This document shows, one piece after another, positions 1-56,574 of a DNA stretch of 64,000 nt. Made by a program: the position numbers and the translations under genes. The stretch covers positions 354,696-418,695 of the forward strand of contig NIVC01000889.1 of assembly GCA_002269645.1 (NCBI GenBank), read 5' to 3'. Source of the DNA: Macrostomum lignano (taxonomy: Eukaryota). A model generated the notes under the pieces. The model was not told the origin of the DNA, did no database searches, and was given only the letters and a program-made list of their open reading frames with translations. How positions within the stretch are numbered: the stretch's first letter is position 1; each line of letters starts with the position of its first letter.

Positions 1-14339
<14,339 letters not shown>

Positions 14340-15973: not shown

Positions 15974-16672
15974 CTCATACTGCATCCGGTTTACCAGGTG
16001 GCCCCCAGGTGTGAAGCGCGTGTCACCCCGGTTCCGCATGCAGTCCTCGCTCCTTACTCCCCTATTTTCTCTCATCGGCAATCCTCCGACAACAATGAAC
16101 CAAGAGGATTTTCAAGAATTATAAATTAGCTCTCAGATTTGGCAAGGCACCCATTGTCCTCAATGATAGGCGGGGCTCGGAGTCACTCGAGTTTGAAGGT
16201 CGCTCAGCTTCTTAAGCGCACTTATGAATCGCCCAGAGCATCAAATCTGCCCCGCAACCCTCAGCTCGACCCTGCAATTTTATTTTTTAACCAGTGATCT
16301 TAATAATGAAAAAAATGGACGGCTCAATTAAAAATGTAGTTGCCATGCCGCACCAGCGATAGTTCACAGGAGTCGTCTTCCTTTTTGTTGCAACGCAAAA
16401 CCGTGACTTCGCTTCTGACCCCAAAATCTGCTTTCCACAATGCTCAGACCGAATCGCCTCGGGGTGGCTTTTAATAGTCGCTCGGGTCGCTCGTAGAGCA
16501 GATGTTGAAGCCCGTTATTCCGAATTTATATTTCATTGATGCACTGAGCTGGCCAGAGAAGTTCTACCTCGCTATTCTCTTTTTTCTCTACTTACTGTCT
16601 CACCATTTCTCACTACACAGCTGGTTGTTCTCCCGCCCTGTTATCTTCTCTTTTCTCTTCCCACTCCGCCAT

Positions 16673-17640
16673 CTCTCCCTCTCCATTTTCCCTCTTCCTC
16701 TCTCCCACTCTCCCACTCTCCCACTCTCCCACTCTCCACTTCTCTCCCACTCTCCCCCTCTCCACCTCTCTCCCACTCTCCCCCTCTCCACCTCTCTCCC
16801 ACTCTCCCCCTCTCCACCTCTCTCCCACTCTCCCCCTCCACCTCTCTCCCACTCTCCCCCTCTCCACCTCTCTCCCACTCTCCCCCTCTCCCCTCTCTCC
16901 CACTCTCCCCCTCTCCACCTCTCTCCCACTCTCCCCCTCTCCACCTCTCTCCCACTCTCCCCCTCTCCACCTCTCTCCCACTCTCCCCTCTCCACCTCTC
17001 TCCCACTCTCCCCTCTCCACCTCTCTCTCCCACTCTCCCCCTCTCCACCTCTCTCCCACTCTCCCCTCTCCACCTCTCTCCCACTCTCCCCCTCTCCACC
17101 TCTCTCCCACTCTCCCCCTTTTCACCTCTCTCCCACTCTCCCCCTCTCCACCTCTCTCCCACTCTCCCCCTCTCCACCTCTCTCCCACTCTCCCCCTCTC
17201 CACCTCTCTCTCCCACTCTCCCCCTCTCCACCTCTCTCCCACTCTCCCCCTCTCCACCTCTCTCCCACTCTCCCCCTCTCCACCTCTCTCCCACTCTCCC
17301 CTCTCCACCTCTCTCTCCCACTCTCCCCCTCCACCTCTCTCCCACTCTCCCCTCTCCACCTCTCTCCCACTCTCCCCCTCTCCACCTCTCTCCCACTCTC
17401 TACCTCTCTCCCACTCTCCACCTCTCTCCCACTCTCTACCTCTCCACCTCTCTCCCACTCTCCACCTCTCTCCCACTCTCCCCCTCTCCACCTCTCTCCC
17501 ACTCTCTCCCACTCTCCCCCTCTCCACCACTCTCCCCCTCTCCACCTCTCTCCCACTCTCCCCCTCTCCACCTCTCTCCCACTCTCTACCTCTCTCCCAC
17601 TCTCCCCCTCTCTCCCACTCTCCCCCACTCTTTCTCTACC
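16673..17640. repeat. Pyrimidine-rich low-complexity tandem repeat (CTCTCCCACT/CTCTCCAC units)
   Basis: About 1 kb with essentially no G on the + strand, built from CTCTCCCACTCTCCCC-type units. Confidence 0.95.
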
Positions 17641-18344
17641 TAGTCTTCCTATCTCTTCCTCTTATCTCTCTGCCTCACTCTCTCGTCGCCTCTCTCCCCT
17701 AGCTCTCTCATATCCGTCTTCTGTCTGTTCCTCTGAGTGCGACTTCGGTACGATCCTGCAGCCAGCAGTCAGATCTTTCTTCTCGTCACTCGCTGAGCTG
17801 AAAGAGCTGAACTCTTACCGCTCGTACGAGTAGTCTCTAGAAGAAGCTGTGCTCGGTTTAACATTGAAGTGTCAAAAAAACGTAAGCGCTCCTCCTTCTT
17901 AACGCTCTCTTCTCTTTTAGTCAGCGAAACAATAAACTGAGAGACTGGTTCAGACCAGAGGAACAAATTCTAACTACAATGACAGCTTTGTGGGCGAGAC
18001 TCTAAAGAAAAGGTTGTCAACTGTCAAGTCAAGTGTACAAGCCTTTCTGGTATTGTATTTTTTAAACAAAAAAAGTTTGCACGGGCGCTGGGACACTCGA
18101 TGATATTGATCCCACACTGGTCCGCTCTCGGTCCAGTGAGTTTTGGATTGCCCATCAGAGTCATCAAGTGAGCTTTGTGCGAACATGGGGTTTATATATG
18201 TTTATATATTTAATTTTAATATTCTGTCTGCTCTAAGCAGCTAGGAATACTACTGTGAGTAGAAATATAGCCATAGGTATAAAAATATAAACGATAGTTT
18301 ATCCGAAGAAATAGGTGCTGCTGGTCAAAGTGTATATCTGTCTA

Positions 18345-29176: not shown

Positions 29177-32100
29177 TCAGAAGACGCAGTCCTTCGGCTG
29201 GCTGAGCCCCAGTCGAATCCAAGCCACTTCGACTAGCAGAATGATCAGCCCAAGACCATAGAAGCAGCCAGTCAGCGCGAGTCCTCCAACAACGTGATTG
29301 AGTCCAATGGAACTCGCGGTCGAAGCTGCGTTGCCTTTGCTGCTACTGGCGCAAGCTGAAGTAACATTTTCCGATCGCATGTAGGTCCAAAATAGTCGCT
29401 GCATCGCTCCCGTCTCGTGCAGCTTCTGCAAACTTAATTAAAGAATTATCAGTTGTTACAAAGCGTCATTGTGTTAATTTATAACTTTGTCAGTAGACTT
29501 GTATTTTAAGGAAAGTATATTTGTATTTTAAATATTGTGGTTTGTACTTTAAGAACACTAGCTTGTACTTTTAAAATTACATGTTTGTACTTTTTAGACT
29601 TGTAGGATTGTACTTTTAGAATTGTAGGATTTTACTTATAGAATTGTAGCTTTGTACTTTAACAACTATAAGTTTCTACTTGATGGATTTTAGACTTGTA
29701 CAAATTATTAGTTTATCGGAGTTTAGGAACAATGGTATTAAGTTTTGATACATTCGATTTTTCGCTCAAGGAGTTTAGATCTGTACTTTAAGGAGTGTAG
29801 AATTGTACTTTCAAGATTGTAGATTTATGCTTTAAGGAGTGTTTATTATCACATTTATCGTTCGAACTCTTTTAGCGTACTAGAAATCCATGACGTCTGC
29901 GTACAAGGCATCCTTCGGATACATGAATGCCACGGTGGCTGTGTTAAAATGCTCCTTGGCAATATAGTACTCCTTGCACTTTTCGTTGGCAATCGGCAGC
30001 AGGAAGCTGTAGTCGTTGATGCAGGCTCGGTGACCCTCGGATACCTGCAAAGTTCCAAAACTTCCTAGGCAAAAAATTCCGCATCGCATTGAAATTGTAT
30101 GAAGTGTGAGCTCGCTAAAGTGATCTGCAAGACTTTTTGACTTCGGGAAGTTTCGAGTTTGTGAAGATTCGAGCGTGCGATCTGTGTACACATGGCCTGG
30201 CTCACAATACCCGATTAGCACACACGCCCAAGCACTCACCCCGTCGAGACAGTGTCCCAGCGGCACTGCAACCATTGTCTCAGCCAACTGTTTGTACATT
30301 CCATCTGGCGCCTGACTAAACATGGTGTACAGATTCGAGTCTAGGACCACATTAGGTAGGATTGACGACTGAGCTAGCAGATCTTCCAGCGACCGTATGG
30401 GCAGATTTTCGGTGTGGACCGTCAGGAAGGCAGTCAGGTTGGCTGTCTCAGGAAAAGGCAGCGAAAAAGTAGGTTGGGTTTTGAATTCCATGTATATTAT
30501 GAAATATAGTAGAAATTCACGAAAATCTAAATTCAATGAAGCACTTAAAGAAGCTACATAATAAATTGCCTTTAACACGGACTCACCCGTGTAGGCGCTG
30601 TAGACTATCACGGTAAACATCCACCAAAATGCCATGACAGTGCGGGCTGACATTGCGAACGGAAAGAAATCCTGACCCTGCTGCAGAAAGCTGCCCACGA
30701 TGCTCCACAGGTACTCCTGCACGCGAACCTCGTCAGCGATGGAATACTGCAGGCCGAGGTTGTAAGCAGAGAATGGCGAAAAATACGACAGGCACCAAGC
30801 GATGACTGAACTCATGACGACAAACGCAACCAGCGTTAGCCAAACGTACGAATGAAACGACTCAAAAACGCTAACAAGGTCCGGAGCAGAGACTGGTCGG
30901 GGTAACAAAATGCAAGTCGACTCTTCGAACAAGGACACGGAGAAGTCTATTACTCGTTCTCGAACTGTTGTCCTGGTGAACGGGCCAGCGGCGAGAGTGA
31001 CTGCCTGTCGTTAAAAAAAATGGATAAAAATTGGTCAGTTAAACTGATTTCATCAGTAGGTTGTAGTTACCAACAGCCGGCACTTATGTGGACTGAAACC
31101 GATATTGCGGAAATTTTCTAAGGTCCTACATCTTGTTCTGCGGTGAAAATCCGGTACTTTAGCGGTTTCTGCTACCTACAGACTAAACTCTAATTGGGAA
31201 CATCGTCAAAAAGCAGAATCTTTCACAGCCCTGAAACTTCATATCCGTTAAAAACTCTTACTAGTCACTTTCGCCAGCTCACAACCCAAAGTATTTCGAC
31301 AATGTGAAATTTCCAGCTTGGGAAAGTGACTCCTTTGGTGGTTTTTTGCTACCTACATTCTCTACATGGATGATTTTCCGACTTTACGTTGCCTACACTC
31401 GATTTTGCATCATCGACGCAACATCGAGTGCCTAACAGCCAGATGCACTGGACTAACCAGCCAGCTATACTCGTACTCACCCCTCTCTGCAGCTCCCCTA
31501 CGCAGCCAGAGTAGACAGTTGAATTTAGCATCGGAGCGCCGAACTCCCCGTCGGCTGGTTGTTTGGTGACGTAGCTAAAAAACAAAATTTACTTTCGTTT
31601 AGTTTTGCTACTTTCAGTAGTACACAGTTCTTGTTTGTTTTAAAGCAATACTCTCACCGAAATTCCATTTTCTCAGCTAGGAAGTTAAGTAAGTCCATTA
31701 TAAATCCTTTGATTTGCACCGTGTTGTTTGCGGATCTAGACACGTAGCTCGTCAGTGGTACTTGCTGCAACAAAAAATAATCTATGCTCATATTTTGTTA
31801 GTTCATTAATGTGCAACAGTGAGATGCCTACCTCCGGTGCGCAAATGGTGATGGTCTCGTTCTTGAAGCCCAGAAAGGTGTTGGGGAAGACCAGCTGCTC
31901 AGACCGGTAGCTGAACAGTTTGCTCAGCTCACCGCTGGACACGTCGAACGCGGCTGATCGAAGGAACTCCAGCGGTGAGGACTTCAACTTGTTGTAAGAA
32001 GCGACCAGCTCTAGACCCTGCGAGTCGAGGTGTCTGGTGCTGGCGTTGAAGGACGTCCGACCTATCAGCTGTGGGATGGCGAACAGGTATGAGTAGGTAT

Positions 32101-39545: not shown

Positions 39546-42500
39546 ATGAATGCATCCACCAACATTGCAATGTCGCCAAAGCCGCCGCCGCCACCGTCGC
39601 CATTGGCGGCAGCAACAGCAGCAACAGCGGCTCCAAGCTGCAGCCTTGAACTGCCTGAGCTGCCAAGGCGCCGCAACAGCGACACTCCAGTGACCGTCTC
39701 GCTTCAGCTAGAGGTCAGCAACCATCCGCCAGAGTTGTTGGCATCCCTGAATGCCCTCCGTTGTGAGGCTGCCTTCACTGATGTCGCCCTAGAGGCGGAC
39801 ACGTGCACACTGCACGCGCACCGAGCCCTGCTAGCGGCCGCTTCGCCCTACTTCCGGGCGATGTTCTCCAGCCAGTTCAAAGAGGGCGCCGCTTCTACAG
39901 TCAGCGTCACCAGTGTATCCGGGGAGACCCTCAGGCTCATAGTGGAATACGTGTACACCAGCAAGATAGAGATCACCACTGACAATGTGCAGGATTTGAC
40001 TGTCGGCTGTAAACTATTGCATTTCCCTTTGATACTTCATCAATGCGTCAGCTTCCTGATGCATCATTTGGACTCGACTAACGCTGTAACCATGGAGCAG
40101 TTCGCGGCGGCTTACGATTTTGTTGAACTACGGGAAGAAGCTCGACAACGCGTGTTGGAAAATTTTGCCAGCCTAGCAGAGTCGGACGAACTGGCCGAGT
40201 TGACCTTGGAACAGCTGACCGGCTGTCTGCAGTCGGACGATCTGTTTGTCCGATCGGAGGACGAGGTCGCTCGAGCTGTGCTGCGCTGGGTCGGCCACCG
40301 GTCGGTTGAGAGATCGCAACATCTGAGCGGCCTGCTTCTGGGCTGTCGGCTGAGCTGTTTGAATCGAGAATTTATTCAGGTCTGTGTTTTCCCAATGAAT
40401 CGATTGGTAGATACTTCATTGACCTTCATTTGTAATCTTTACCTGGGACCTTAACCATCTTTGTCACCTTGGCTAGATTAGTGGAATCCTGTCTGTGTGA
40501 CCTTGACTAGATTAGGGGAATCCTGACTCTTTACCTTGACTAGATTAGGGGAATCCTGTCTGTGACCTTGACTAGATTAGGGGAATCCTGTCTGTGACCT
40601 TGACTAGATTAGGGGAATCCTGTCTGTGACCTTGACTAGATCAGGGGAATCCTGTCTGTGTGACCTGGACTAGATTAGGGGAATCCTGTCTGTGTGACCT
40701 TGACTAGATTAGGGGAATCCTGTCTGTGACCTTGACTAGATCAGGGGAATCCTGTCTGTGTGACCTGGACTAGATTAGGGGAATCCTGTCTGTGTGACCT
40801 TGACTAGATTAGGGGAATCCTGTCTGTGTGACCTTGACTAGATCATGGAAATCCTGTCTGTGACCTTGACTAGATCAGGGAAATCCTGTCTGTGTGACCT
40901 TGACTAGATTAGGGGAATCCTGTCTGTGTGACCTTTACTAGATCAGGGGAATCCTGTCTGTGACCTTGACTAGATCAGGGGAATCCTGTCTGTGACCTTG
41001 ACTAGATCAGGGGAATCCTGTCTGTGACCTTGACTAAATCAGGGGAATCCTGCACTTCACGACTTTCAACTCGCCACCCCACCGGCTGTCTCCATGCAGT
41101 CCGAGCTGCTCTTATCGCCGCTGCTGCGAGACTTCAGCTCCGAGCTGCTGACTCAGCTGACTGGCCATCTCAGCCTGGAAGAGTCCCCGGATGCGACGCC
41201 GCGACCTTCAACTCTGCGCCGCGAACAGCTGGTTGTGCTGTCGCACGACTATTTGGAGGCCTACAACCCGGCCAAGGACAAGTGGTGCCGCATCGCCTTC
41301 CCGACTGGCGGCTTCCGCCCGACGGCGCGCGATTCCGCCGTCTGCGTACTCGAGAATGAAATCTGGCTGACTGGCGGCGTGGACTCCCAGGGCCGCGCCT
41401 TGCCAGATGTTGTCCGCTACAGTCCGCTGACCAACGCCTGGTCCGAGGGGCCGCCCCTGCTGTCCGCCCGTAGCCGGCACACCTGCGTTTGCGTGCGGGG
41501 CAGCCTGCTGGTGATGGGCGGCGTCGGGCTGGACGGCCGGATGTGCACCGGGGCGGAGGTGCTGCGGCTCCGGGCTGGGGGTGAGTGGCCTCTGGGGGGG
41601 GGCAGGCAGGCAGACAGGCAGAGACAAACATTAAGATAGACAGACAGGCATCCACTATGACAGACACTAGGACAGGCATTAAGGCAGGCAGACACTAAAA
41701 GAAGCACTGCTTAAGGCAGACACTAAAGAGATATACGGATAGATTAATCCATCAAATGGACAGACGATTAAGCAGGCAGACATCTGTGTGTGACATCACT
41801 AAGACGGACAGACAGACAGACAGACAAACATCACTAAGACAGACAGACAAACAGACAGACATCCATCACTAGGACAGACAGACAGACATCACTAAGACAG
41901 GCAGGCAGACAGACAGACATCACTAGGACAGACAGACAGACATCACTAAGACAGACACACAGACAGACAGACAAACAGACATCACTAAGACAGACAGCCG
42001 CTAAGACATCCAGACAGACACGGAAAGCTGGGGAGCCAATCCCGATATTCTACTGAGTTGTGCCCCCAGAAAATCTTTAGTTCCGGCAGACATCTGCTGC
42101 CAGTTGCCATGATATTTATCCGAAACTTTTCAATCCGCTTAGCGTTTGGCCTTGAAGCAGTTTTTGTATTGAATTGTAAATTTATTTATAAGTATTGAAA
42201 AACCTTTGCAATTTTTTCAGTCTTCACTACATTCTTAATCGTTTGATTGGAGCTCTCGCAGCTTGGCTGAGGTCGCGAACTTCTCAAAAATATCTCTATT
42301 CTTGTCTGAATCTCTATCTCCTCCTCAGTGTCTACCTCTCGCTCCCACTCTCTACCTCTCTCCCACTCTCTACCTCTCTCTCCCACTCTCTACCTCTCTC
42401 TCCCACTCTCTACCTCTCTCTCCCACTCTCTACCTCTCTCTCCCACTCTCTAACTCTCTCCCACTCTCTACCTCTCTCTCCCACTCTCTACCTCTCTCTC

Positions 42501-43623
42501 CCACTCTCTACCTCTCTCCCACTCTCTACCTCTCTCTCCCACTCTCTACCTCTCTCTCCCACTCTCTACCTCTCTCTCCCACTCTCTAACTCTCTCCCAC
42601 TCTCTACCTCTCTCCCACTCTCTACCTCTCTCTCCCACTCTCTACCTCTCTCCCACTCTCTACCTCTCTCTCCCACTCTCTACCTCTCTCTCCCACTCTC
42701 TACCTCTCTCCCACTCTCTACCTCTCTCTCCCTCTCTCTACCTCTCTCCCACTCTCTACCTCTCTCTACCTCTCTCTCCCACTCTCTACCTCTCTCTCCC
42801 ACTCTCTACCTCTCTCTCCCACTCTCTACCTCTCTCCCACTCTCTACCTCTCTCCCACTCTCTCCCTCTCTCTCCCACTCTCTAACTCTCTCCCACTCTC
42901 TACCTCTCTCTCCCACTCTCTACCTCTCCAACTCAGTCTCTGCCTCTCTCTCCCACTCTCTACCTCTCTCTCCCACTCTCTATCTCTCCAACTCAGTCTC
43001 TACCTCTCCCTCCCCCACTCTCTACCTCTAACTTTCAGTCTCAACCTCCAACTCCCAGTCTAACCTCTCTCTTTCTCCCCCTCAGCCTCTACTTCTCACC
43101 CCCATTCACCGCAGGCCAGGCGGTGTGGGAGCCGGCCGGCCAGCTTCCAGAGCACGCCTGCCGCAAAGAAGCCTCGGCCACTGCGCTCTCCTCCTCCTGC
43201 CTAATAGAAGTCGGCGGCGTGAAAGTAATGAACGGCAACACGCTGATCATGAACACTCTAGACCAGCACCTGGTCAATGACAAAGGAGTTGAGTACACTG
43301 GCGAGTACTATGTACTGCCGGAGAAACTTCGGTGCGCCCTGCTAGCGGTGATTGACAATCTGGTATTGATTCTGTCCAGTCAGACTGGCAAGTTCTGGTG
43401 TCTGGAGCCGATGCGCAAGTCTGTCAGATCGCTGCCAGCACTGAGGCCGGAGCCAACTCAGCCACTGCTGTGCGCCACTGTCTGCGACCGACGGCTATAT
43501 TGCGTTGATCGGGGGCATCCGCACTCCATTGCCGTGTTCGACCCCGAGTCCAGCTGCTGGTCAACTGTGCGGCCGCCTAAATTGTCTACGGAGATTTTGC
43601 ATTGCGTCACTCTGCAGCTGTGA
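39546..43623 (+). CDS. Kelch-like BTB-BACK-Kelch protein (Cullin-3 adaptor type), about 607 aa, 3 exons
   Basis: Exons 39546-40379 (BTB FTDVALEADTCTLHAHRALLAAASPYFRAMF plus BACK; CAG|gtctgt), 41100-41580 (catgcag|TCC; kelch IWLTGG, LLVMGG; G|gtgagt), 43115-43623 (ccgcag|GC; stop TGA). Total 1824 nt in frame. Confidence 0.92.
40470..41050. repeat. 32/34-bp intronic minisatellite
   Basis: GT(GT)GACCTTGACTAGAT(T/C)AGGGGAATCCTGTCT, about 17 copies. Confidence 0.95.
41610..42020. repeat. Degenerate GACA-rich repeat with CATCACTAAG spacers
   Basis: GACA runs interrupted by CATCACTA(A/G)GAC. Confidence 0.8.
42310..43030. repeat. Pyrimidine-rich tandem repeat (CTCTCTACCTCTCTCCCACT)
   Basis: 20/22-bp units with no G on the + strand, in Kelch intron 2. 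Confidence 0.95.
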
Positions 43624-44989: not shown

Positions 44990-45002
44990 GACACAGGCAG
45001 GC

Positions 45003-45057
<55 letters not shown>

Positions 45058-45152
45058 AAGACTGTAGACAGACAGAAAGACATAAAGACAGACAGACAGA
45101 CAGACAGAAAGACTGTAGACAGACAGAAAGACAGACAGACAGGCAGGCAGGC

Positions 45153-45199
<47 letters not shown>

Positions 45200-45900
45200 A
45201 AGACTGTAGACAGACAGAAAGACTGTAGACAGACAGAAAGACAGAAAGACTGTAGACAGACAGAAAGACTGTAGACAGACAGAAAGACTGTAGACAGACA
45301 GAAAGACTGTTGACAGACAGAAAGACAGACAGACAGACAGAAAGACTGTAGACAGACAGAAAGACAGAAAGACTGTAGACAGACAGAAAGACTGTAGACA
45401 GACAGACAGACAGACAGACAGGCAGGCAGGCAGACAGACAGACAGACAGACAGAAAGACTGTAGACAGACAGAAAGACTGTAGACAGACAGAAAGACAGA
45501 AAGACTGTAGACAGACAGACAGACAGAAAGACAGACAGACAGACAGACAAACAGAAAGACTGTAGACAGACAGAAAGACTGTAGACAGACAGAAAGACTG
45601 TAGACAGACAGAAAGACAGAAAGACTGTAGACAGACAGACAGACAGAAAGACAGACAGACAGACAGAAAGACAGACAGACAGACAGACAGAAAGACTGTA
45701 GACAGACAGCGCAAGTGCATCTGCAGATTGCAGTTTTTACCGATAATTTCTGCAGTGTAATTTCGCTACTATAGTCTTTCTGTCAGTCAGTCAGACAGAC
45801 AGACAGACAGACAGACAGACAGGCAGGCAGACAGACAGAAAGACTGTAGACAGACGGACAGACAGACAGACAGACAAACAGAAAGACTGTAGACAGACAG
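44990..45900. repeat. Compound (GACA)n / GAAAGACTGTA repeat
   Basis: GACA runs with recurring GAAAGACTGTA inserts. Confidence 0.93.
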
Positions 45901-47503: not shown

Positions 47504-50128
47504 TCAGGGACGGAAAAACCGTCTCAGATCGGCCAACTGCTTTGAAAACCCGACACCGCCGCCGCAGCCGCCGCCTCTGCCGTCGATGCCGCATTCCAGA
47601 GCTGCGCCTGACAGTGACGCCGCCAAGCAGACGAGAAACGCTTGAACATCGCCAAAGTTCTCGCTCTTGTCGCCGCCGTCGAACCAGTCGCTGTTGCTGT
47701 TGTTCTCGCCGACGTTGTCACTAGCTGCTTCGTCTTCGACTTGTCCAGCAGCGCTCGCAGCCACCGAGGCTGACAGCACGGAGAAAAAGCCGGGACACAG
47801 AGCCCGCCTGACCAACTGCTGACGTTGGTTCGCCGCAGGCACCGTCGTGTTAGAGTCCGCAGCCGAGCAGATCAGCAGACAGGCGGTCACCAGCGGGCAG
47901 ACGGCAGATAGCGGGCTGGAGTCGGAGAACTCACTTATCGCCTGCAGACAGCGGTGCAGGCAGTAGCGCAGCGGCTGTCGCGACTCCGGCAGCTGGCGAA
48001 CGCTCAGTCTCGACTGCCAGGCCTCCAACCATTCGATCCCACCAACGTCCGGGTCCGCTGTCGAGTTGCTGTCCAGTTCAAAGTCATCGCGCTGCCGACA
48101 CCAGCGGGCAAACTGACGGCCGTTGTTCGTTCGCAGGTCATACTTGGCACCGAGCTGCCAGGCCTCTGCATCTTCAAGCTCGTCGACAGCAGCGGCGCCG
48201 CCTCCGCCGTCGAGCCGACGCTCCGCTCTGGCGAGGCTCTCCTCGAGCGAGCGCGGGCGTCCGCTCGTGTACTCAATTCGAAACACCTCGTCCCTGGTCA
48301 GGTCGAACACTCGGCAGATCCGGCGGACCCAACCCATGGCGGCCGAGAAGTAGATTAGGCCGACCTCCGCCTTCCGCCTGTCCCCACCAGTCGACTGGCA
48401 GCTGGCTACGACGGCGTGTCGAAAGGTCAGCCTGTGACAGTCATCATCGTCATCGTAGTCGTTCTCGTCAAAGTCGTCCACGCCGATGTCACTGACGTGT
48501 CGCCGGTAGCTGACCGAGCAACCGGGCTGCAGCTCATCGGCAGTGACGACGCGTCTCACCGTGTAGCCGTCGGCGTGCTTGGCGCAGGCAGCAGCCAGCG
48601 GGCAGTCGAAGTCGGCATGCTGCAGCGATACTCGGATCCGCTGGTGAAAACTGGTCCGTCGAGTGTCGACAAAGCAGCGGAACTCGCACACAGGGTCGCG
48701 GTCGACGTTCTGCGGTGCGTGCCCGTAGATCAGCAGTGCTGCTGTAATCAGAGCACCGCTGCAACCGTCCGAAGGCTCAACACGCTGCAGCTCCGTCAGC
48801 AGGCCAGGCGGCTGGCCGTCAATCGACACAACATCGCCGACGCGCAGGTCGCTCAGCGGCACGGAATCGACGCCGTAGCTGCTGTTGGTCCCAACGCTCC
48901 CGGCGCCGCCGACGCTGTCAGCCAGCACCAAAGCCTCCAGCGGGTCACGAGCTGCGGCTAGCGTGGCTGCAAAGCTCAATGGCGACACTGTGCCGGCCTG
49001 AAATACGGCGCCAAGAAATGCGGCGGCGCGACGTTCCACACGTTCAAGAGGCAGCGCCGGCGTCGGGCTGGACGTCAGACGGTGGCGAAGTGCCGGATAG
49101 GCTGCCGGATAGGCGGTCACGGTGCGGCGATGGGCGAACTCCAGCTTGGCAGCGTTCACCTCGACGGATAGCACCATCAGCCGGAGCGCTAAGAGGTTGT
49201 GCCGACGACCTACTGCGCGGACTTCGGCGTGCACCGAGCGTGCAGACGATTCGCTGCCATCAGCCGCCGTGGCGCTAGTCGGCCAGTTGATGTGGTCACC
49301 GGCGCGCAGCTCGGAGTGTTCTTCGAAGACGGTCAGCGAGGCGAATCGCTGCACAGCGGAACCGGCCGAGTGCAACTTGCACCAGCGAGCGAACTGACCG
49401 GCATTGTTGCCAAGCATCGAGTGTCCGGCGTGTCCGAGGCAGCTGCGCGCCCGGTCAACGGTCTCCCCGGCCGGTCGGCAGGCGGAAGCCGGGTAGCGTC
49501 GAATAGCGACTCCTCCGCCGTCCAACCGGAAGTCGTCGCGCAACACGCGGATGCCACCGAAAAGGCTCGGGCGGCCGAAGTGAATGGCGCGTAGAAGACG
49601 CGGCTGCCCAGTGGCCGGGTTGCGCTCCACCGACTCGGCCACGACCAGGTGCGGCAGGCGGTAGTAGCGCAGCTCGACAATGTCACCTGGTTCCGGTGGC
49701 GTATCTGGCGTTACGGCGATCTTCACGGAGGCCGGCGCCATGTCGTTGCCATTGGCAACGCAACAGTCGGTTCCAAATTGTCGGCGCCAGATTCTACTGG
49801 CCAGACGCGGCTCCTCCAGCAGCGGTGCCAGATCGCGCGCCAGACAGCAGCGCAATTCGCGGAGGGCTACGCGAACTGCTCGTTCTGGCAAGTCGATGAA
49901 TTGCTGTTGAACGCTGTCCTGTTGGCTTTTCGACTGACTTGATCGAAGCGCCGGAAATGTCGTTTGCTGAACCGGTGTCGTTGGCAGCAACAGCGGGGAC
50001 GTTGGCAGCCAGAGATTGCGCAGCGCCTGACGGCATTCGAACAGCTCTACTGGGAGGTCGAGGCTGGTGCTGGAGGCTGTGTCGAAGGAGTGTGAGGCGC
50101 TAGGGTAGGTGGCCCTTCTCGACTGCAT
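47504..50128 (-). CDS. 874-aa protein with tandem LRAT-like (permuted NlpC/P60, PLAAT/HRASLS-type) domains, catalytically degenerate
   Basis: Uninterrupted GC-rich 2.6-kb ORF. Repeat 1: PGDIVEL..PHLVV..AIHF..ETVDRARSCLG..SMLGNNAGQFARWCK. Repeat 4: LQPGCSVSY..FRHAVV..LIYF..EESLARAERRL..KYDLRTNNGRQFARWCR. Weaker repeats start at LRAGDHINW and LRVGDVVSI. Pattern matches LRAT GD..H..H..RA..Y.L..NNCEHF. Confidence 0.8.
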   Translation of the reverse strand: MQSRRATYPSASHSFDTASSTSLDLPVELFECRQALRNLWLPTSPLLLPTTPVQQTTFPALRSSQSKSQQDSVQQQFIDLPERAVRVALRELRCCLARDLAPLLEEPRLASRIWRRQFGTDCCVANGNDMAPASVKIAVTPDTPPEPGDIVELRYYRLPHLVVAESVERNPATGQPRLLRAIHFGRPSLFGGIRVLRDDFRLDGGGVAIRRYPASACRPAGETVDRARSCLGHAGHSMLGNNAGQFARWCKLHSAGSAVQRFASLTVFEEHSELRAGDHINWPTSATAADGSESSARSVHAEVRAVGRRHNLLALRLMVLSVEVNAAKLEFAHRRTVTAYPAAYPALRHRLTSSPTPALPLERVERRAAAFLGAVFQAGTVSPLSFAATLAAARDPLEALVLADSVGGAGSVGTNSSYGVDSVPLSDLRVGDVVSIDGQPPGLLTELQRVEPSDGCSGALITAALLIYGHAPQNVDRDPVCEFRCFVDTRRTSFHQRIRVSLQHADFDCPLAAACAKHADGYTVRRVVTADELQPGCSVSYRRHVSDIGVDDFDENDYDDDDDCHRLTFRHAVVASCQSTGGDRRKAEVGLIYFSAAMGWVRRICRVFDLTRDEVFRIEYTSGRPRSLEESLARAERRLDGGGGAAAVDELEDAEAWQLGAKYDLRTNNGRQFARWCRQRDDFELDSNSTADPDVGGIEWLEAWQSRLSVRQLPESRQPLRYCLHRCLQAISEFSDSSPLSAVCPLVTACLLICSAADSNTTVPAANQRQQLVRRALCPGFFSVLSASVAASAAGQVEDEAASDNVGENNSNSDWFDGGDKSENFGDVQAFLVCLAASLSGAALECGIDGRGGGCGGGVGFSKQLADLRRFFRP

Positions 50129-53439: not shown

Positions 53440-54010
53440 TCTCCAAATATGCACCCTCAGCCTCCAGACTTCAGGCCTCCTGGCTCATTGTTCATCGCAG
53501 TGACGATGCTTTTCTTCTGTAGGCCCTCATCGATTCCTTGATGCGAGGAAAAAGGAGGAAGTCGAAAGGACTGACGTCCGGGTAGTACGGCGGATGCGGA
53601 AGAATTTCTAGCCATCCTTGATGACTCGATGATGCAGGCCTCTTGTCACGAATGGCCCTTCAAACCTTCACAATGACTAACAAGTAGAAGTCGCCATTCA
53701 CCGCCTGCCCTGCTGGCACTGGCTGGTTCAAGCGGCAAACTCTTGACGGTCAACGAAGGTGATGCGCTTGATCTTCAGCTGGGCCATGGACCGAGCGACC
53801 TCCCATCGATTCCGATGCTTCTTGCGCTTGATCTTCAGCTGGCCCATGGACCGAGCGACCTCCCATCGATTCCGATGCTTCTTGCGCTTGATCTTCAGCT
53901 GGGCCATGGACCGAGCGACCTCCCATCGATTCCGATGCTTCTTGCGCTTGATCTTCAGCTGGGCCATGGACCGAGCGATCTCCCATCGATTCCGATGCTT
54001 CTTGCGCTTC
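53440..54010 (-). mobile_element. Degenerate mariner (Tc1/mariner) transposase fragment
   Basis: Minus strand, with shifts and stops: ARSMAQLKIKRITFVD ... PVPAGQAVNGDFYLLVIVKV*RAIRDKRP ... QGWLEILPHPPYYPDVSPFDFLLFPRIKESM ... AEGAYLE, matching mariner motifs K.MLITFFD, GQTVN..YY, HPPYSPDLAP.DF.LF, GDYFE. Confidence 0.85.
53762..54008. repeat. 60-bp tandem repeat (about 4 copies) inside the mariner relic
   Basis: GCGCTTGATCTTCAGCTGG(G/C)CCATGGACCGAGCGACCTCCCATCGATTCCGATGCTTCTT, nearly identical copies. Confidence 0.97.
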
Positions 54011-55221: not shown

Positions 55222-55562
<341 letters not shown>

Positions 55563-56574
55563 CACTTCATATTACAGCAGTTTTAAGACTTTTGGTTTTA
55601 GACACGAATGTCGATTTTCGTGTGAAATGAGCAGCTACCTGCACTTTTAAATTCCACGTTTGATAAAGTAATCTGAGGAAAGAATGGAAGGGGTCTGTTT
55701 TTAGCTAGCGAAATCAACTTAGTCTCAATTTACCTAATTACGATTTCGATGCATTGTTTTGAGCTGTTCAGTCAGTCGATGCAGAATTGATTACAGATAA
55801 ACAGGGTCTCAACTGGACAGTTTTGAGTAGCCAGCTAGCCAGCTATTGTTCATGAATATTCATATCATTTCTAACAACTTTCATAATTCCATAGCTAGTG
55901 CTGACGGTTTTTAGCTTGGGAGACTTGAGCTTCAGACAATGTTCTACTCAGCACACGCAAGTCTAAGGCTCTGTCTCTATTCCCTATTGGCATTTCAGGC
56001 TGATCCGCATTCTGCTGAGGCAGAAGCAGAGAGAGAGAGAGGTAGAGAAGAGAAAGCAGAAAGACTCCCAAGTGCCGTTTCCTCGCTAGCACCTCTAATT
56101 TATTTCTGGCCCAATAATGTCAAGAGTAATTTGCTGGATTTTTAGCTACTGTTTCTCCCAGCCTGTTCCGCCGTCTCTTTGAGTCTTTGCTCGAGGATTT
56201 GCGAGGAAAAACCAACTTTGCGACACAGTTTGTAATTTCCGTTGGCTTGGCTTGACTTGGCCCGGAATGCTGAACCTAAGCTTCTTAATTTTGAGTTCTA
56301 ATTGTTTTCAGCTAGCTAGAAAAAAATCTTGCAAGCTAAAAAAGTTGGTGTAATTAACTAATTTATTTACTTCTTACATTTTTAGCAGTATTTCTTATGA
56401 AAATTTATGTACATCAATGGACATTAGTCAGTATAGCATGGAGTTAGGAAATAAAAGGCTATTTATTTACGAAAATGTTAATTAAAACTTCCTGGAAAGT
56501 AAAAAAAAATAAAACTCAGTGTTTTATCACTGTAGGCTCTGAAAAGACAAATAAACACACCATAGGGTTAAATA

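What the first reader, a model, noticed from the sequence alone, without database searches (positions are those of the whole stretch)
47504..50128. Large protein of tandem LRAT/NlpC-P60-like repeats with the catalytic cysteine replaced
Seen: one 874-codon ORF with two clear and two degenerate LRAT-like units, an acidic insertion in unit 4 and a helical C-terminal region. The NCEHF position reads NAGQF (unit 1, ~49400) and NGRQF (unit 4, ~48120); the first His is kept in both. Known: LRAT/PLAAT enzymes need this Cys, and Cys-less single-domain relatives exist (FAM84/LRATD). Inference: a multi-domain pseudoenzyme acting as a lipid/membrane-binding or scaffolding module. It is the most unusual architecture in the window.
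Basis: partly seen in the sequence, partly recalled or inferred. Interest (0 to 1): 0.7.

Follow-up and report, generated by a model that had tools for sequence, protein, structure and literature searches.

The report
Cys-less tandem LRAT-like flatworm protein
This intact flatworm (Macrostomum lignano) gene encodes a protein made of repeated copies of a lipid-acyltransferase (LRAT/PLAAT) domain that have all lost the catalytic cysteine; it is a divergent member of an uncharacterised gene family whose other members keep one working copy, so it is most likely a non-enzymatic binding or regulatory protein.

Summary
Window 47504-50128 (-) is an intact 874-codon ORF, identical to an annotated Macrostomum lignano hypothetical protein. 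It has two clear LRAT-like units, aa 146-254 and aa 531-681. Their NCEHF boxes read NNAGQFARWC (Cys->Ala243) and NNGRQFARWC (Cys->Gly670), and the first His is kept in both. Two degenerate units lie between them. The C-terminal 190 aa match nothing.

Pfam's LRAT model alone is sub-threshold (18 bits against 24.3). Leave-one-out profiles, profile-profile comparison, PDB profile hits (only PLAAT/LRAT) and BLASTP to canonical PF04970 proteins establish homology.

The closest relatives are at least eight M. lignano paralogue lineages with the same unit order. Most carry an extra C-terminal canonical NCEHF unit plus transmembrane helices. This gene has lost that unit, as have P0006 and its tandem neighbour.

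Two genomic copies differ by 0.46% in the CDS with no indels, against 2.4% and 36 indels in the flanks, so the ORF is maintained.

Best reading: a constrained, non-catalytic derivative that acts as a binding or regulatory module. The mechanism is inferred. It is a new variant of a known kind, of moderate interest.

The parts
47504..50128 (-). Complete single-exon ORF of 874 aa plus stop. It equals an M. lignano hypothetical protein (cluster with PAA74139.1 / BOX15_Mlig014099g3).
   Evidence: GC is 64% against about 42% in the flanks, and GC3>GC1>GC2 throughout. There are sharp AT-rich boundaries at the ATG and the stop.
49709..50128 (-). N-terminal region, aa 1-140: predicted helices at low confidence, not conserved among paralogues.
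   Evidence: hhalign probability 0; pLDDT <50
49367..49693 (-). LRAT-like unit 1, aa 146-254. His160 and His183 are kept; the catalytic Cys is replaced by Ala243.
   Evidence: Leave-one-out HMM 71.8 bits. hhalign 99.9% and 99.5%. BLASTP against the PF04970 protein P0064 gives E 1e-8. PDB profile hits are to PLAAT2/3/4 only. AF2 pLDDT is 90-96.
49379..49408 (-). Pseudo NC-box 1, NNAGQFARWC (aa 241-250). Ala243 sits at the Cys position and is invariant in six aligned paralogues.
48899..49315 (-). Degenerate unit 2, aa 272-410: five strands then helices, no NC-box.
   Evidence: N-terminal motif only; hhalign 83.7% against canonical units and 9.5% against Cys-less units; paralogue P0023 unit 2 is detectable; pLDDT 60-87
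48548..48853 (-). Degenerate, C-terminally truncated unit 3, aa 426-527.
   Evidence: 76.7% over profile positions 1-86; P0010/P0048 aa 342-406
48086..48538 (-). LRAT-like unit 4, aa 531-681. His571 is kept, the second His is Tyr593 and the catalytic Cys is Gly670.
   Evidence: 22.9 and 21.1 bits; 99.7% and 99.5%; pLDDT 90-97 outside the inserts. tblastn of the paralogues' unit 4 also hits unit 1.
48431..48496 (-). Acidic insert specific to this protein, aa 545-566 (VSDIGVDDFDENDYDDDDDCHR), between strands 1 and 2 of unit 4.
48149..48208 (-). Second insert specific to this protein, aa 641-660 (Gly/Ala/acidic), before the NC-box helix of unit 4.
   Evidence: pLDDT 44-52
48098..48127 (-). Pseudo NC-box 2, NNGRQFARWC (aa 668-677). 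Gly670 sits at the Cys position.
47507..48076 (-). C-terminal region, aa 685-874: predicted helical, with no significant similarity to anything. It stands where the paralogues have unit 5, the catalytic NCEHF unit and the TM helices.
47852..47920 (-). Hydrophobic segment aa 737-759 (Kyte-Doolittle 1.96), a possible membrane helix.
47585..47647 (-). Hydrophobic segment aa 828-848 (Kyte-Doolittle 1.83), a possible membrane helix.

Best explanation
The gene encodes a maintained but catalytically dead member of a Macrostomum-specific family of multi-unit LRAT-like proteins. SHOWN: The ancestral layout, still seen in paralogues P0004, P0005, P0010/48 and P0023, has three parts. First come five Cys-less or degenerate LRAT-like units. 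Then comes one canonical NCEHF unit, then two or three C-terminal transmembrane helices. This gene keeps units 1-4 and has lost the canonical unit. No remnant of that unit lies elsewhere in the window. Unit 1 keeps both triad histidines around an invariant Ala; unit 4 keeps one. INFERRED: Without a nucleophile it cannot form the acyl-thioester intermediate of LRAT/PLAAT enzymes. It most likely works as a non-enzymatic module. The retained His-lined pseudo-active-site groove would bind a lipid head group, an acyl chain or a partner protein. The protein may be tethered to membranes by its hydrophobic C-terminal helices. It may also modulate its catalytic paralogues.
For: Identity and homology: searches show collinear paralogues. 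One search gives the leave-one-out and canonical-unit HMMs. One search gives hhalign 99.5-99.9% for units 1 and 4. In one search all nine PDB hits are PLAAT/LRAT. In some searches the Cys-less unit-1 profile retrieves PF04970 proteins carrying NNCEHFARWCKTG, with BLASTP E 1e-8 for unit 1 and 2e-4 for unit 4. In one search Pfam LRAT scores 34.7 bits on paralogue P0019, with its best stretch on the Cys-less unit 4. Loss of the catalytic unit. Cys replaced. Structure: one search gives pLDDT 90-97 for units 1 and 4. One search gives Foldseek BFVD rank 2 as a Catovirus 'lecithin retinol acyltransferase' (probability 1.00, rmsd 3.4 A over 121 columns, E 0.018) and rank 1 as a C51/CHAP peptidase. Constraint: the CDS diverges 0.46% with no indels, the flanks 2.44% with 36 indel events (Fisher p 1e-11); non-synonymous sites against flanks give p 8e-11. 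Literature: the catalytic Cys lies in NCEHFV and the triad is Cys-His-His (PMC5133064, PMC10318531). The LRAT-domain protein FAM84B/LRATD2 associates with vesicle membranes (PMC8536394).
Against: Pfam LRAT is below its gathering score on this protein (18 against 24.3 bits). Foldseek against the PDB with the whole model gave no significant hit and no PLAAT in the top 50. pN/pS between the two copies is 0.48, which is not distinguishable from 1 (p 0.20, 12 differences). Synonymous divergence is also below the flanks, so gene conversion could mimic constraint. A third, near-identical copy carries a 1-bp deletion. The branch is long and the protein carries low-complexity inserts. There is no expression, localisation or binding data. 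The membrane anchoring rests on hydropathy alone, in an Ala-rich, GC-biased protein.
Confidence: 0.6

Rival explanations
1. The gene is a decaying relic. After losing the catalytic unit it drifts towards pseudogenisation, and the long ORF survives only because the duplication is recent or because copies are homogenised by gene conversion.
For: It has the longest branch among the paralogues. It has specific low-complexity inserts and an orphan C-terminus. pN/pS of 0.48 is not significantly below 1. One near-identical copy has a frameshifting 1-bp deletion. GC is 64% with sharp boundaries, and synonymous divergence is lower than in the flanks, which fits GC-biased gene conversion.
Against: There are 874 codons without a stop in two copies whose flanks carry 36 indel events and five-fold more substitutions. 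Key unit-1 residues are invariant across paralogues that share only about 20-30% identity. AF2 folds units 1 and 4 with pLDDT above 90. The 1-bp deletion lies in a G/C run of a long-read assembly and may be an assembly error.
Confidence: 0.2
2. It is still part of an enzyme. Either it uses another nucleophile, or it completes an active site in trans by pairing with a catalytic paralogue, as in domain-swapped LRAT-type dimers.
For: Both triad histidines are kept in unit 1, and His236 and Cys250 are invariant in the paralogues. In bivalve relatives, units with Ser at the Cys position keep both His as often as canonical units do (69/79 against 23/27), so nucleophile replacement may occur in this superfamily. 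Domain swapping in an HRASLS3/LRAT chimera appears only as the title of a reference (Golczak 2015) listed in PMC10318531.
Against: Ala243 and Gly670 cannot act as nucleophiles. The residue equivalent to His of NCEHF is Gln in both units. Cys250 and Cys677 lie two helical turns from the active-site position. No assay exists.
Confidence: 0.1
3. The middle of the protein (units 2-3) consists of Tudor/Agenet/SH3-like beta-barrels unrelated to LRAT, making the protein a peptide-binding adaptor.
For: The Foldseek PDB top hits are tandem Tudor domains of UHRF1/2 (E 0.07-0.6). UniProt names the paralogue fragment P0040 'Agenet-like domain-containing protein'.
Against: None of those hits is significant, and their rmsd is 15-17 A. 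Pfam finds no Tudor or Agenet domain even at E 10. The paralogue blocks for units 2 and 3 match LRAT-unit profiles at 77-84% probability. Each unit has helices after its five strands, like unit 1.
Confidence: 0.1

Closest known systems
LRAT / PLAAT1-5 (HRASLS) acyltransferase-phospholipases, Pfam PF04970, NlpC/P60 superfamily
   Same: Units 1 and 4 are homologous over the whole domain, including the H-box His, the 'RA.sRLge' helix and the NC-box helix (N-x-x-x-F..WC). The strand-then-helix order is the same. There are hydrophobic C-terminal helices.
   Different: There are four tandem units instead of one. The catalytic Cys is Ala or Gly, and the NC-box His is Gln. The second triad His is lost in unit 4. 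Pfam's own threshold is not reached.
Small, probably bacterial, PF04970 proteins from metagenomes with NNCEHFARWCKTG plus a C-terminal TM helix (P0064-P0069)
   Same: These are the best canonical matches to unit 1: 33% identity over 64 aa, with a near-identical NC-box context (NN.xxFARWCK).
   Different: They are single-domain proteins of about 140 aa with an intact Cys-His-His triad.
M. lignano paralogues P0004 (PAA52141.1), P0005, P0010/P0048 and P0023, named 'LRAT domain-containing protein'
   Same: Collinear units 1-4 with the same Cys-less NC-boxes: Ala in unit 1 and N-S/N-x-x-D/Q-F-A-R-W-C in unit 4.
   Different: They add unit 5, a canonical NCEHF unit and 2-3 strongly hydrophobic TM helices. 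They have lower GC (46-57%), one short intron and no acidic insert.
M. lignano P0006 (PAA73093.1) and its tandem neighbour (L005 584-3520)
   Same: They have no NCEHF anywhere, and they group with this protein in a crude NJ tree.
   Different: They still keep the N-terminal half of the last unit (WDHIVIER...). This protein has an unrelated C-terminus.
LRATD1/LRATD2 (FAM84A/B)
   Same: They are LRAT-domain proteins with non-enzymatic roles reported: membrane or vesicle association and trafficking (PMC8536394). That they lack the catalytic Cys is recalled from memory and was not checked here.
   Different: They have a single domain and are vertebrate proteins with a proline-rich region. No orthology was tested.
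Bivalve multi-LRAT proteins (Potamilus KAK3603616.1, Mytilus VDI83150.1)
   Same: They have many tandem LRAT-like units, most of them without Cys.
   Different: The order is reversed: an N-terminal canonical unit, then TM helices, then the repeats. Most repeats have Ser at the Cys position with both His kept.

Membership tests
LRAT/PLAAT (Pfam PF04970) | Pfam PF04970 score at or above the gathering threshold (24.3 bits) | tested here: not met
   18.0 bits, E 0.0037, covering only aa 216-252. Unit 1 alone scores 16.4 bits and unit 4 gives no hit.
LRAT/PLAAT (Pfam PF04970) | Demonstrable homology to bona fide LRAT domains | tested here: met
   The canonical-unit HMM hits units 1 and 4. hhalign gives 99.5%. 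PDB profile hits are PLAAT/LRAT only. The Cys-less profile retrieves PF04970 proteins. BLASTP gives 1e-8 and 2e-4.
LRAT/PLAAT (Pfam PF04970) | Catalytic Cys of the NCEHF box | tested here: not met
   Ala243 and Gly670 sit at the aligned position. Units 2 and 3 have no NC-box.
LRAT/PLAAT (Pfam PF04970) | First (H-box) histidine | tested here: met
   H160 in unit 1 and H571 in unit 4
LRAT/PLAAT (Pfam PF04970) | Second histidine of the Cys-His-His triad | tested here: inconclusive
   Kept in unit 1 (H183) and replaced by Tyr593 in unit 4
LRAT/PLAAT (Pfam PF04970) | Permuted NlpC/P60 fold | tested here: inconclusive
   AF2 models units 1 and 4 confidently, with five strands followed by helices. 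BFVD Foldseek returns a Catovirus LRAT (probability 1.00, E 0.018) and a C51 peptidase. PDB Foldseek with the whole 874-aa model gives nothing significant. No domain-level search was possible.
LRAT/PLAAT (Pfam PF04970) | C-terminal transmembrane anchor | tested here: inconclusive
   Hydrophobic segments at aa 737-759 and 828-848 score KD 1.8-2.0, against 2.1-2.4 in the paralogues. AF2 confidence there is low.
Macrostomum multi-unit LRAT-like paralogue family (unnamed) | Collinear units 1-4 with the family-specific Cys-less NC-boxes | tested here: met
Macrostomum multi-unit LRAT-like paralogue family (unnamed) | C-terminal canonical NCEHF unit | tested here: not met
   It is absent from the protein. 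tblastn of seven paralogues finds no remnant anywhere in the 64-kb window.
LRATD/FAM84 | Single LRAT domain; orthology to vertebrate LRATD1/2 | not tested
   No LRATD sequence was fetched. The architecture (four units) differs on its face.
Tudor/Agenet | Match to a Tudor/Agenet profile or a significant structural match | tested here: not met
   Pfam finds none at E<=10. Foldseek Tudor hits have E 0.07 or worse and rmsd about 16 A.

The most novel reading that the evidence does not exclude
Spiralian animals (Macrostomum, bivalves) may carry an undescribed class of membrane-associated proteins built from arrays of LRAT-fold units. One Cys unit would do the chemistry. The many Cys-less units would be either lipid or partner sensors or, where Ser replaces Cys with both His kept, a new Ser-His-His catalytic variant of the NlpC/P60 fold. 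On this reading the window's gene is a free-standing 'sensor-only' derivative that regulates its catalytic paralogues.
Probability: 0.25. Interest if true: 0.6.

Novelty: new variant of a known kind. Interest (0 to 1): 0.42.

Why it matters
LRAT/PLAAT enzymes remodel phospholipids, store vitamin A and degrade organelles. Their Cys-less relatives are poorly understood. This is a lineage-specific family with tandem Cys-less units. It includes members that have shed the catalytic unit altogether, so it offers a natural series for asking what a dead LRAT fold does: binding, regulation or scaffolding. It sits in a flatworm that is amenable to RNAi and transgenesis. For genome annotation, the work turns an 'uncharacterised protein' into a placed family member and shows that Pfam thresholds miss these units.

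Tried and rejected
1. The word-indexed homologue search found only the query itself, both with the whole protein and with the six-paralogue alignment, so I got no relatives from either search. The exhaustive HMMER search found them.
2. Single-sequence AF2 was useless, with mean pLDDT 37.
3. Whole-protein BLASTP self-comparison showed no internal repeat.
4. PDB phmmer with the single sequence gave only noise.
5. NCBIfam gave nothing.
6. Three searches looked for relatives of the C-terminal 190 aa, and none was significant: against the paralogue C-termini, against the P0006-type C-termini, and by tblastn in all frames. MAFFT places this region opposite unit 5, while hhalign and HMMER weakly place it opposite the TM hairpin. 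Neither placement is supported.
7. An ORF arising by chance in GC-rich DNA is rejected by homology along 680 aa and by the CDS-against-flank contrast.
8. A missed downstream exon carrying the NCEHF unit is not supported.
9. Literature searches for the gene id, for Macrostomum plus LRAT, and for LRAT pseudoenzymes found nothing.
Full report
WHAT IS THERE. Window 47504-50128 (-) is one uninterrupted ORF of 874 codons. It is identical to a deposited Macrostomum lignano protein. Its 90% cluster holds PAA74139.1 (BOX15_Mlig014099g3) and the 424-aa PAA77774.1. The source contig is NIVC01000889.1. The ORF is 64% G+C and sits between flanks of about 42%. The composition switches exactly at the ATG and at the stop, and GC3>GC1>GC2 holds along the whole length. 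NNAGQFARWC is at aa 241-250 and NNGRQFARWC at aa 668-677.

IS IT LRAT-LIKE? Pfam's LRAT model (PF04970) gives only a sub-threshold hit: 18 bits against a cutoff of 24.3, on aa 216-252. It gives nothing on unit 4. The word-indexed homologue search returned only the query. The exhaustive HMMER search found 43 relatives.

From these I iterated a unit profile, which found 197 LRAT-like units, 178 of them nearly full length. Leave-one-out tests are clear. A profile of 142 Cys-less units from other proteins hits aa 146-254 (71.8 bits) and aa 569-679 (22.9 bits). A profile of 34 canonical NCEHF units hits both, at 20.3 and 21.1 bits, and aligns Cys with Ala243 and Gly670.

Profile-profile comparison of the Macrostomum blocks with non-Macrostomum unit profiles gives these probabilities:
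- Units 1 and 4: 99.5-99.9%.
- Unit 2: 84% at best.
- Unit 3: 77% at best.
- The N-terminal control: 0%.

A PDB profile search returns nine hits, all PLAAT2/3/4 or the HRASLS3-LRAT chimera, and they span the whole domain. A profile made only of Cys-less Macrostomum unit-1 sequences retrieves small PF04970-annotated proteins that carry NNCEHFARWCKTG. BLASTP of unit 1 against one of them gives E 1e-8, and unit 4 gives 2e-4, with NNAGQF and NNGRQF opposite NNCEHF. Pfam itself scores paralogue P0019 at 34.7 bits, with its best stretch on the Cys-less unit 4.

STRUCTURE. AF2 with a 63-row alignment folds unit 1 (aa 131-255) and unit 4 (aa 521-640 and 670-680) at pLDDT 90-97. Units 2 and 3 reach 60-87, and both termini stay below 50. 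Each unit has five strands followed by helices. Foldseek with the whole model found nothing significant in the PDB. In BFVD, rank 1 was a C51/CHAP peptidase. Rank 2 was a Catovirus 'lecithin retinol acyltransferase' (probability 1.00, rmsd 3.4 A over 121 columns, E 0.018). Fold support is therefore suggestive only. A domain-level search could not be run.

CATALYTIC RESIDUES. Unit 1 keeps both histidines (H160, H183) and has Ala243 at the Cys position. That Ala is invariant in six aligned paralogues. Unit 4 keeps H571, has Tyr593 for the second His and has Gly670 for Cys. The His of NCEHF is Gln in both units. LRAT-type enzymes use a Cys-His-His triad with the Cys in NCEHFV (PMC10318531, PMC5133064). 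Classical catalysis is therefore not expected from this protein.

The closest relatives are all M. lignano paralogues at about 20-33% identity: P0004/46, P0005, P0006, P0010/47/48, P0019/40 and P0023. They are collinear with this protein through units 1-4. P0004, P0005, P0010/48 and P0023 then add a further degenerate unit, a canonical NCEHF unit and 2-3 strongly hydrophobic helices.

This gene lacks all of that. tblastn with seven paralogues finds no remnant anywhere in the window. Its last 190 aa match nothing. P0006 and a tandem neighbour (L005 584-3520) have also lost NCEHF but keep the front half of that unit. A crude NJ tree groups them with this protein on long branches. More distant relatives are bivalve proteins (Potamilus, Mytilus) with an N-terminal canonical unit, TM helices and many Cys-less repeats. 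Amphioxus proteins with tandem canonical units are also related.

IS IT MAINTAINED? A second genomic copy (L002) differs at 12 of 2625 coding bases, 5 synonymous and 7 non-synonymous, with no indel. The 4.8 kb of flanks differ by 2.44% and carry 36 indel events (Fisher p 1e-11). pN/pS is 0.48, which is not significant on its own. Non-synonymous sites are far less diverged than the flanks (p 8e-11). Synonymous sites are also lower (p 0.003), so gene conversion may contribute. A third copy (L003) is 99.74% identical over 14.6 kb. It carries a 1-bp deletion at codon 409 and a 6-bp in-frame deletion at codon 857. This may be a real null allele or an assembly error.

INTERPRETATION. Three things are shown: a constrained ORF, a tandem Cys-less LRAT-like architecture, and loss of the family's catalytic unit. 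One thing is inferred: a non-enzymatic binding or regulatory role, possibly membrane-tethered through aa 737-759 and 828-848. One precedent is weak. The LRAT-domain protein FAM84B/LRATD2 associates with vesicle membranes and affects trafficking (PMC8536394). Three rivals remain open at lower probability. These are a decaying relic, residual or trans-complemented catalysis, and Tudor-like middle domains.

NOVELTY. The domain superfamily and the idea of Cys-less LRAT proteins are known, and the protein itself is in public databases as 'hypothetical'. The tandem, mostly Cys-less architecture, its expansion in Macrostomum and the catalytic-unit-less derivatives do not appear in the literature I could search. 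I rate it a new variant of a known kind, of moderate interest.

Noticed in passing
homologues P0008-P0035 (bivalve-type proteins), not in the window: Among non-Macrostomum units, 79 have Ser at the catalytic Cys position, and 69 of these keep both triad histidines. The figure for canonical Cys units is 23 of 27, and for units with other residues it is 0 of 22. This co-retention suggests a possible Ser-His-His catalytic variant of the LRAT fold rather than dead domains.
   Followed up: partly
window 47504-50128 versus flanks: The gene is 64% G+C (GC3 72%, Lys 1% against Arg 10%), set in about 42% G+C DNA with boundaries exactly at the start and stop. The paralogues are 46-57%. Synonymous divergence between copies is lower than flank divergence. 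GC-biased gene conversion between copies is one possible cause.
   Followed up: partly
L003 (NIVC01000724.1), codons 409 and 857 of the gene: A third copy is 99.74% identical over 14.6 kb. It has a 1-bp deletion in a G/C run, giving the annotated 424-aa product PAA77774.1, and a 6-bp in-frame deletion. It could be a null allele or a long-read assembly error.
   Followed up: partly
L005 584-3520 (NIVC01001037.1): An unnamed 920-aa gene sits in tandem with paralogue P0006. It belongs to the same family and also lacks NCEHF.
   Followed up: partly
P0023 (PAA65928.1), aa ~430-550: This 1379-aa paralogue has a duplicated N-terminal module, seven detectable units in all. One unit reads ANCGTRF, with a Cys one residue upstream of the canonical position.
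   Followed up: no
window 39546-43623 (+): A BTB-BACK-Kelch gene lies convergent with the LRAT-like gene, about 3.9 kb from its 3' end. Its introns hold long tandem arrays: 34 bp x18 at 40461-41052 and a CT-rich 20 bp x38 at 42331-43072.
   Followed up: partly
window 29880-30938 (-): A 352-aa ORF matches the ligand-gated ion channel domain (Pfam Lig_chan, E 1e-20), probably an exon of an ionotropic glutamate receptor gene.
   Followed up: no
window 1-2000 and 16001-18000: The first 2 kb are 69.6% G+C. The stretch 16-18 kb has an extreme GC skew (-0.65) and overlapping long ORFs on both strands with no Pfam match, probably low-complexity repeat DNA.
   Followed up: no
window 44993-45709, 55228-55563, 53763-54009: Long microsatellites (ACAG)n x184 and (TGTC)n x84, and a 60-bp x4 tandem repeat at 98% identity.
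   Followed up: no
P0040 (UniRef A0A1I8J5..), fragment of paralogue P0019: UniProt names this fragment 'Agenet-like domain-containing protein', and the non-significant top Foldseek PDB hits are tandem Tudor domains. The five-stranded front half of these units may look Tudor/SH3-like to automatic methods.
   Followed up: partly
L006 (Logan SRR30276804 contig, 972 nt): P0007 is a stand-alone 156-aa Cys-less unit (NNATYF) that is 43% identical to unit 1, the highest identity of any hit. The source organism is unknown.
   Followed up: no
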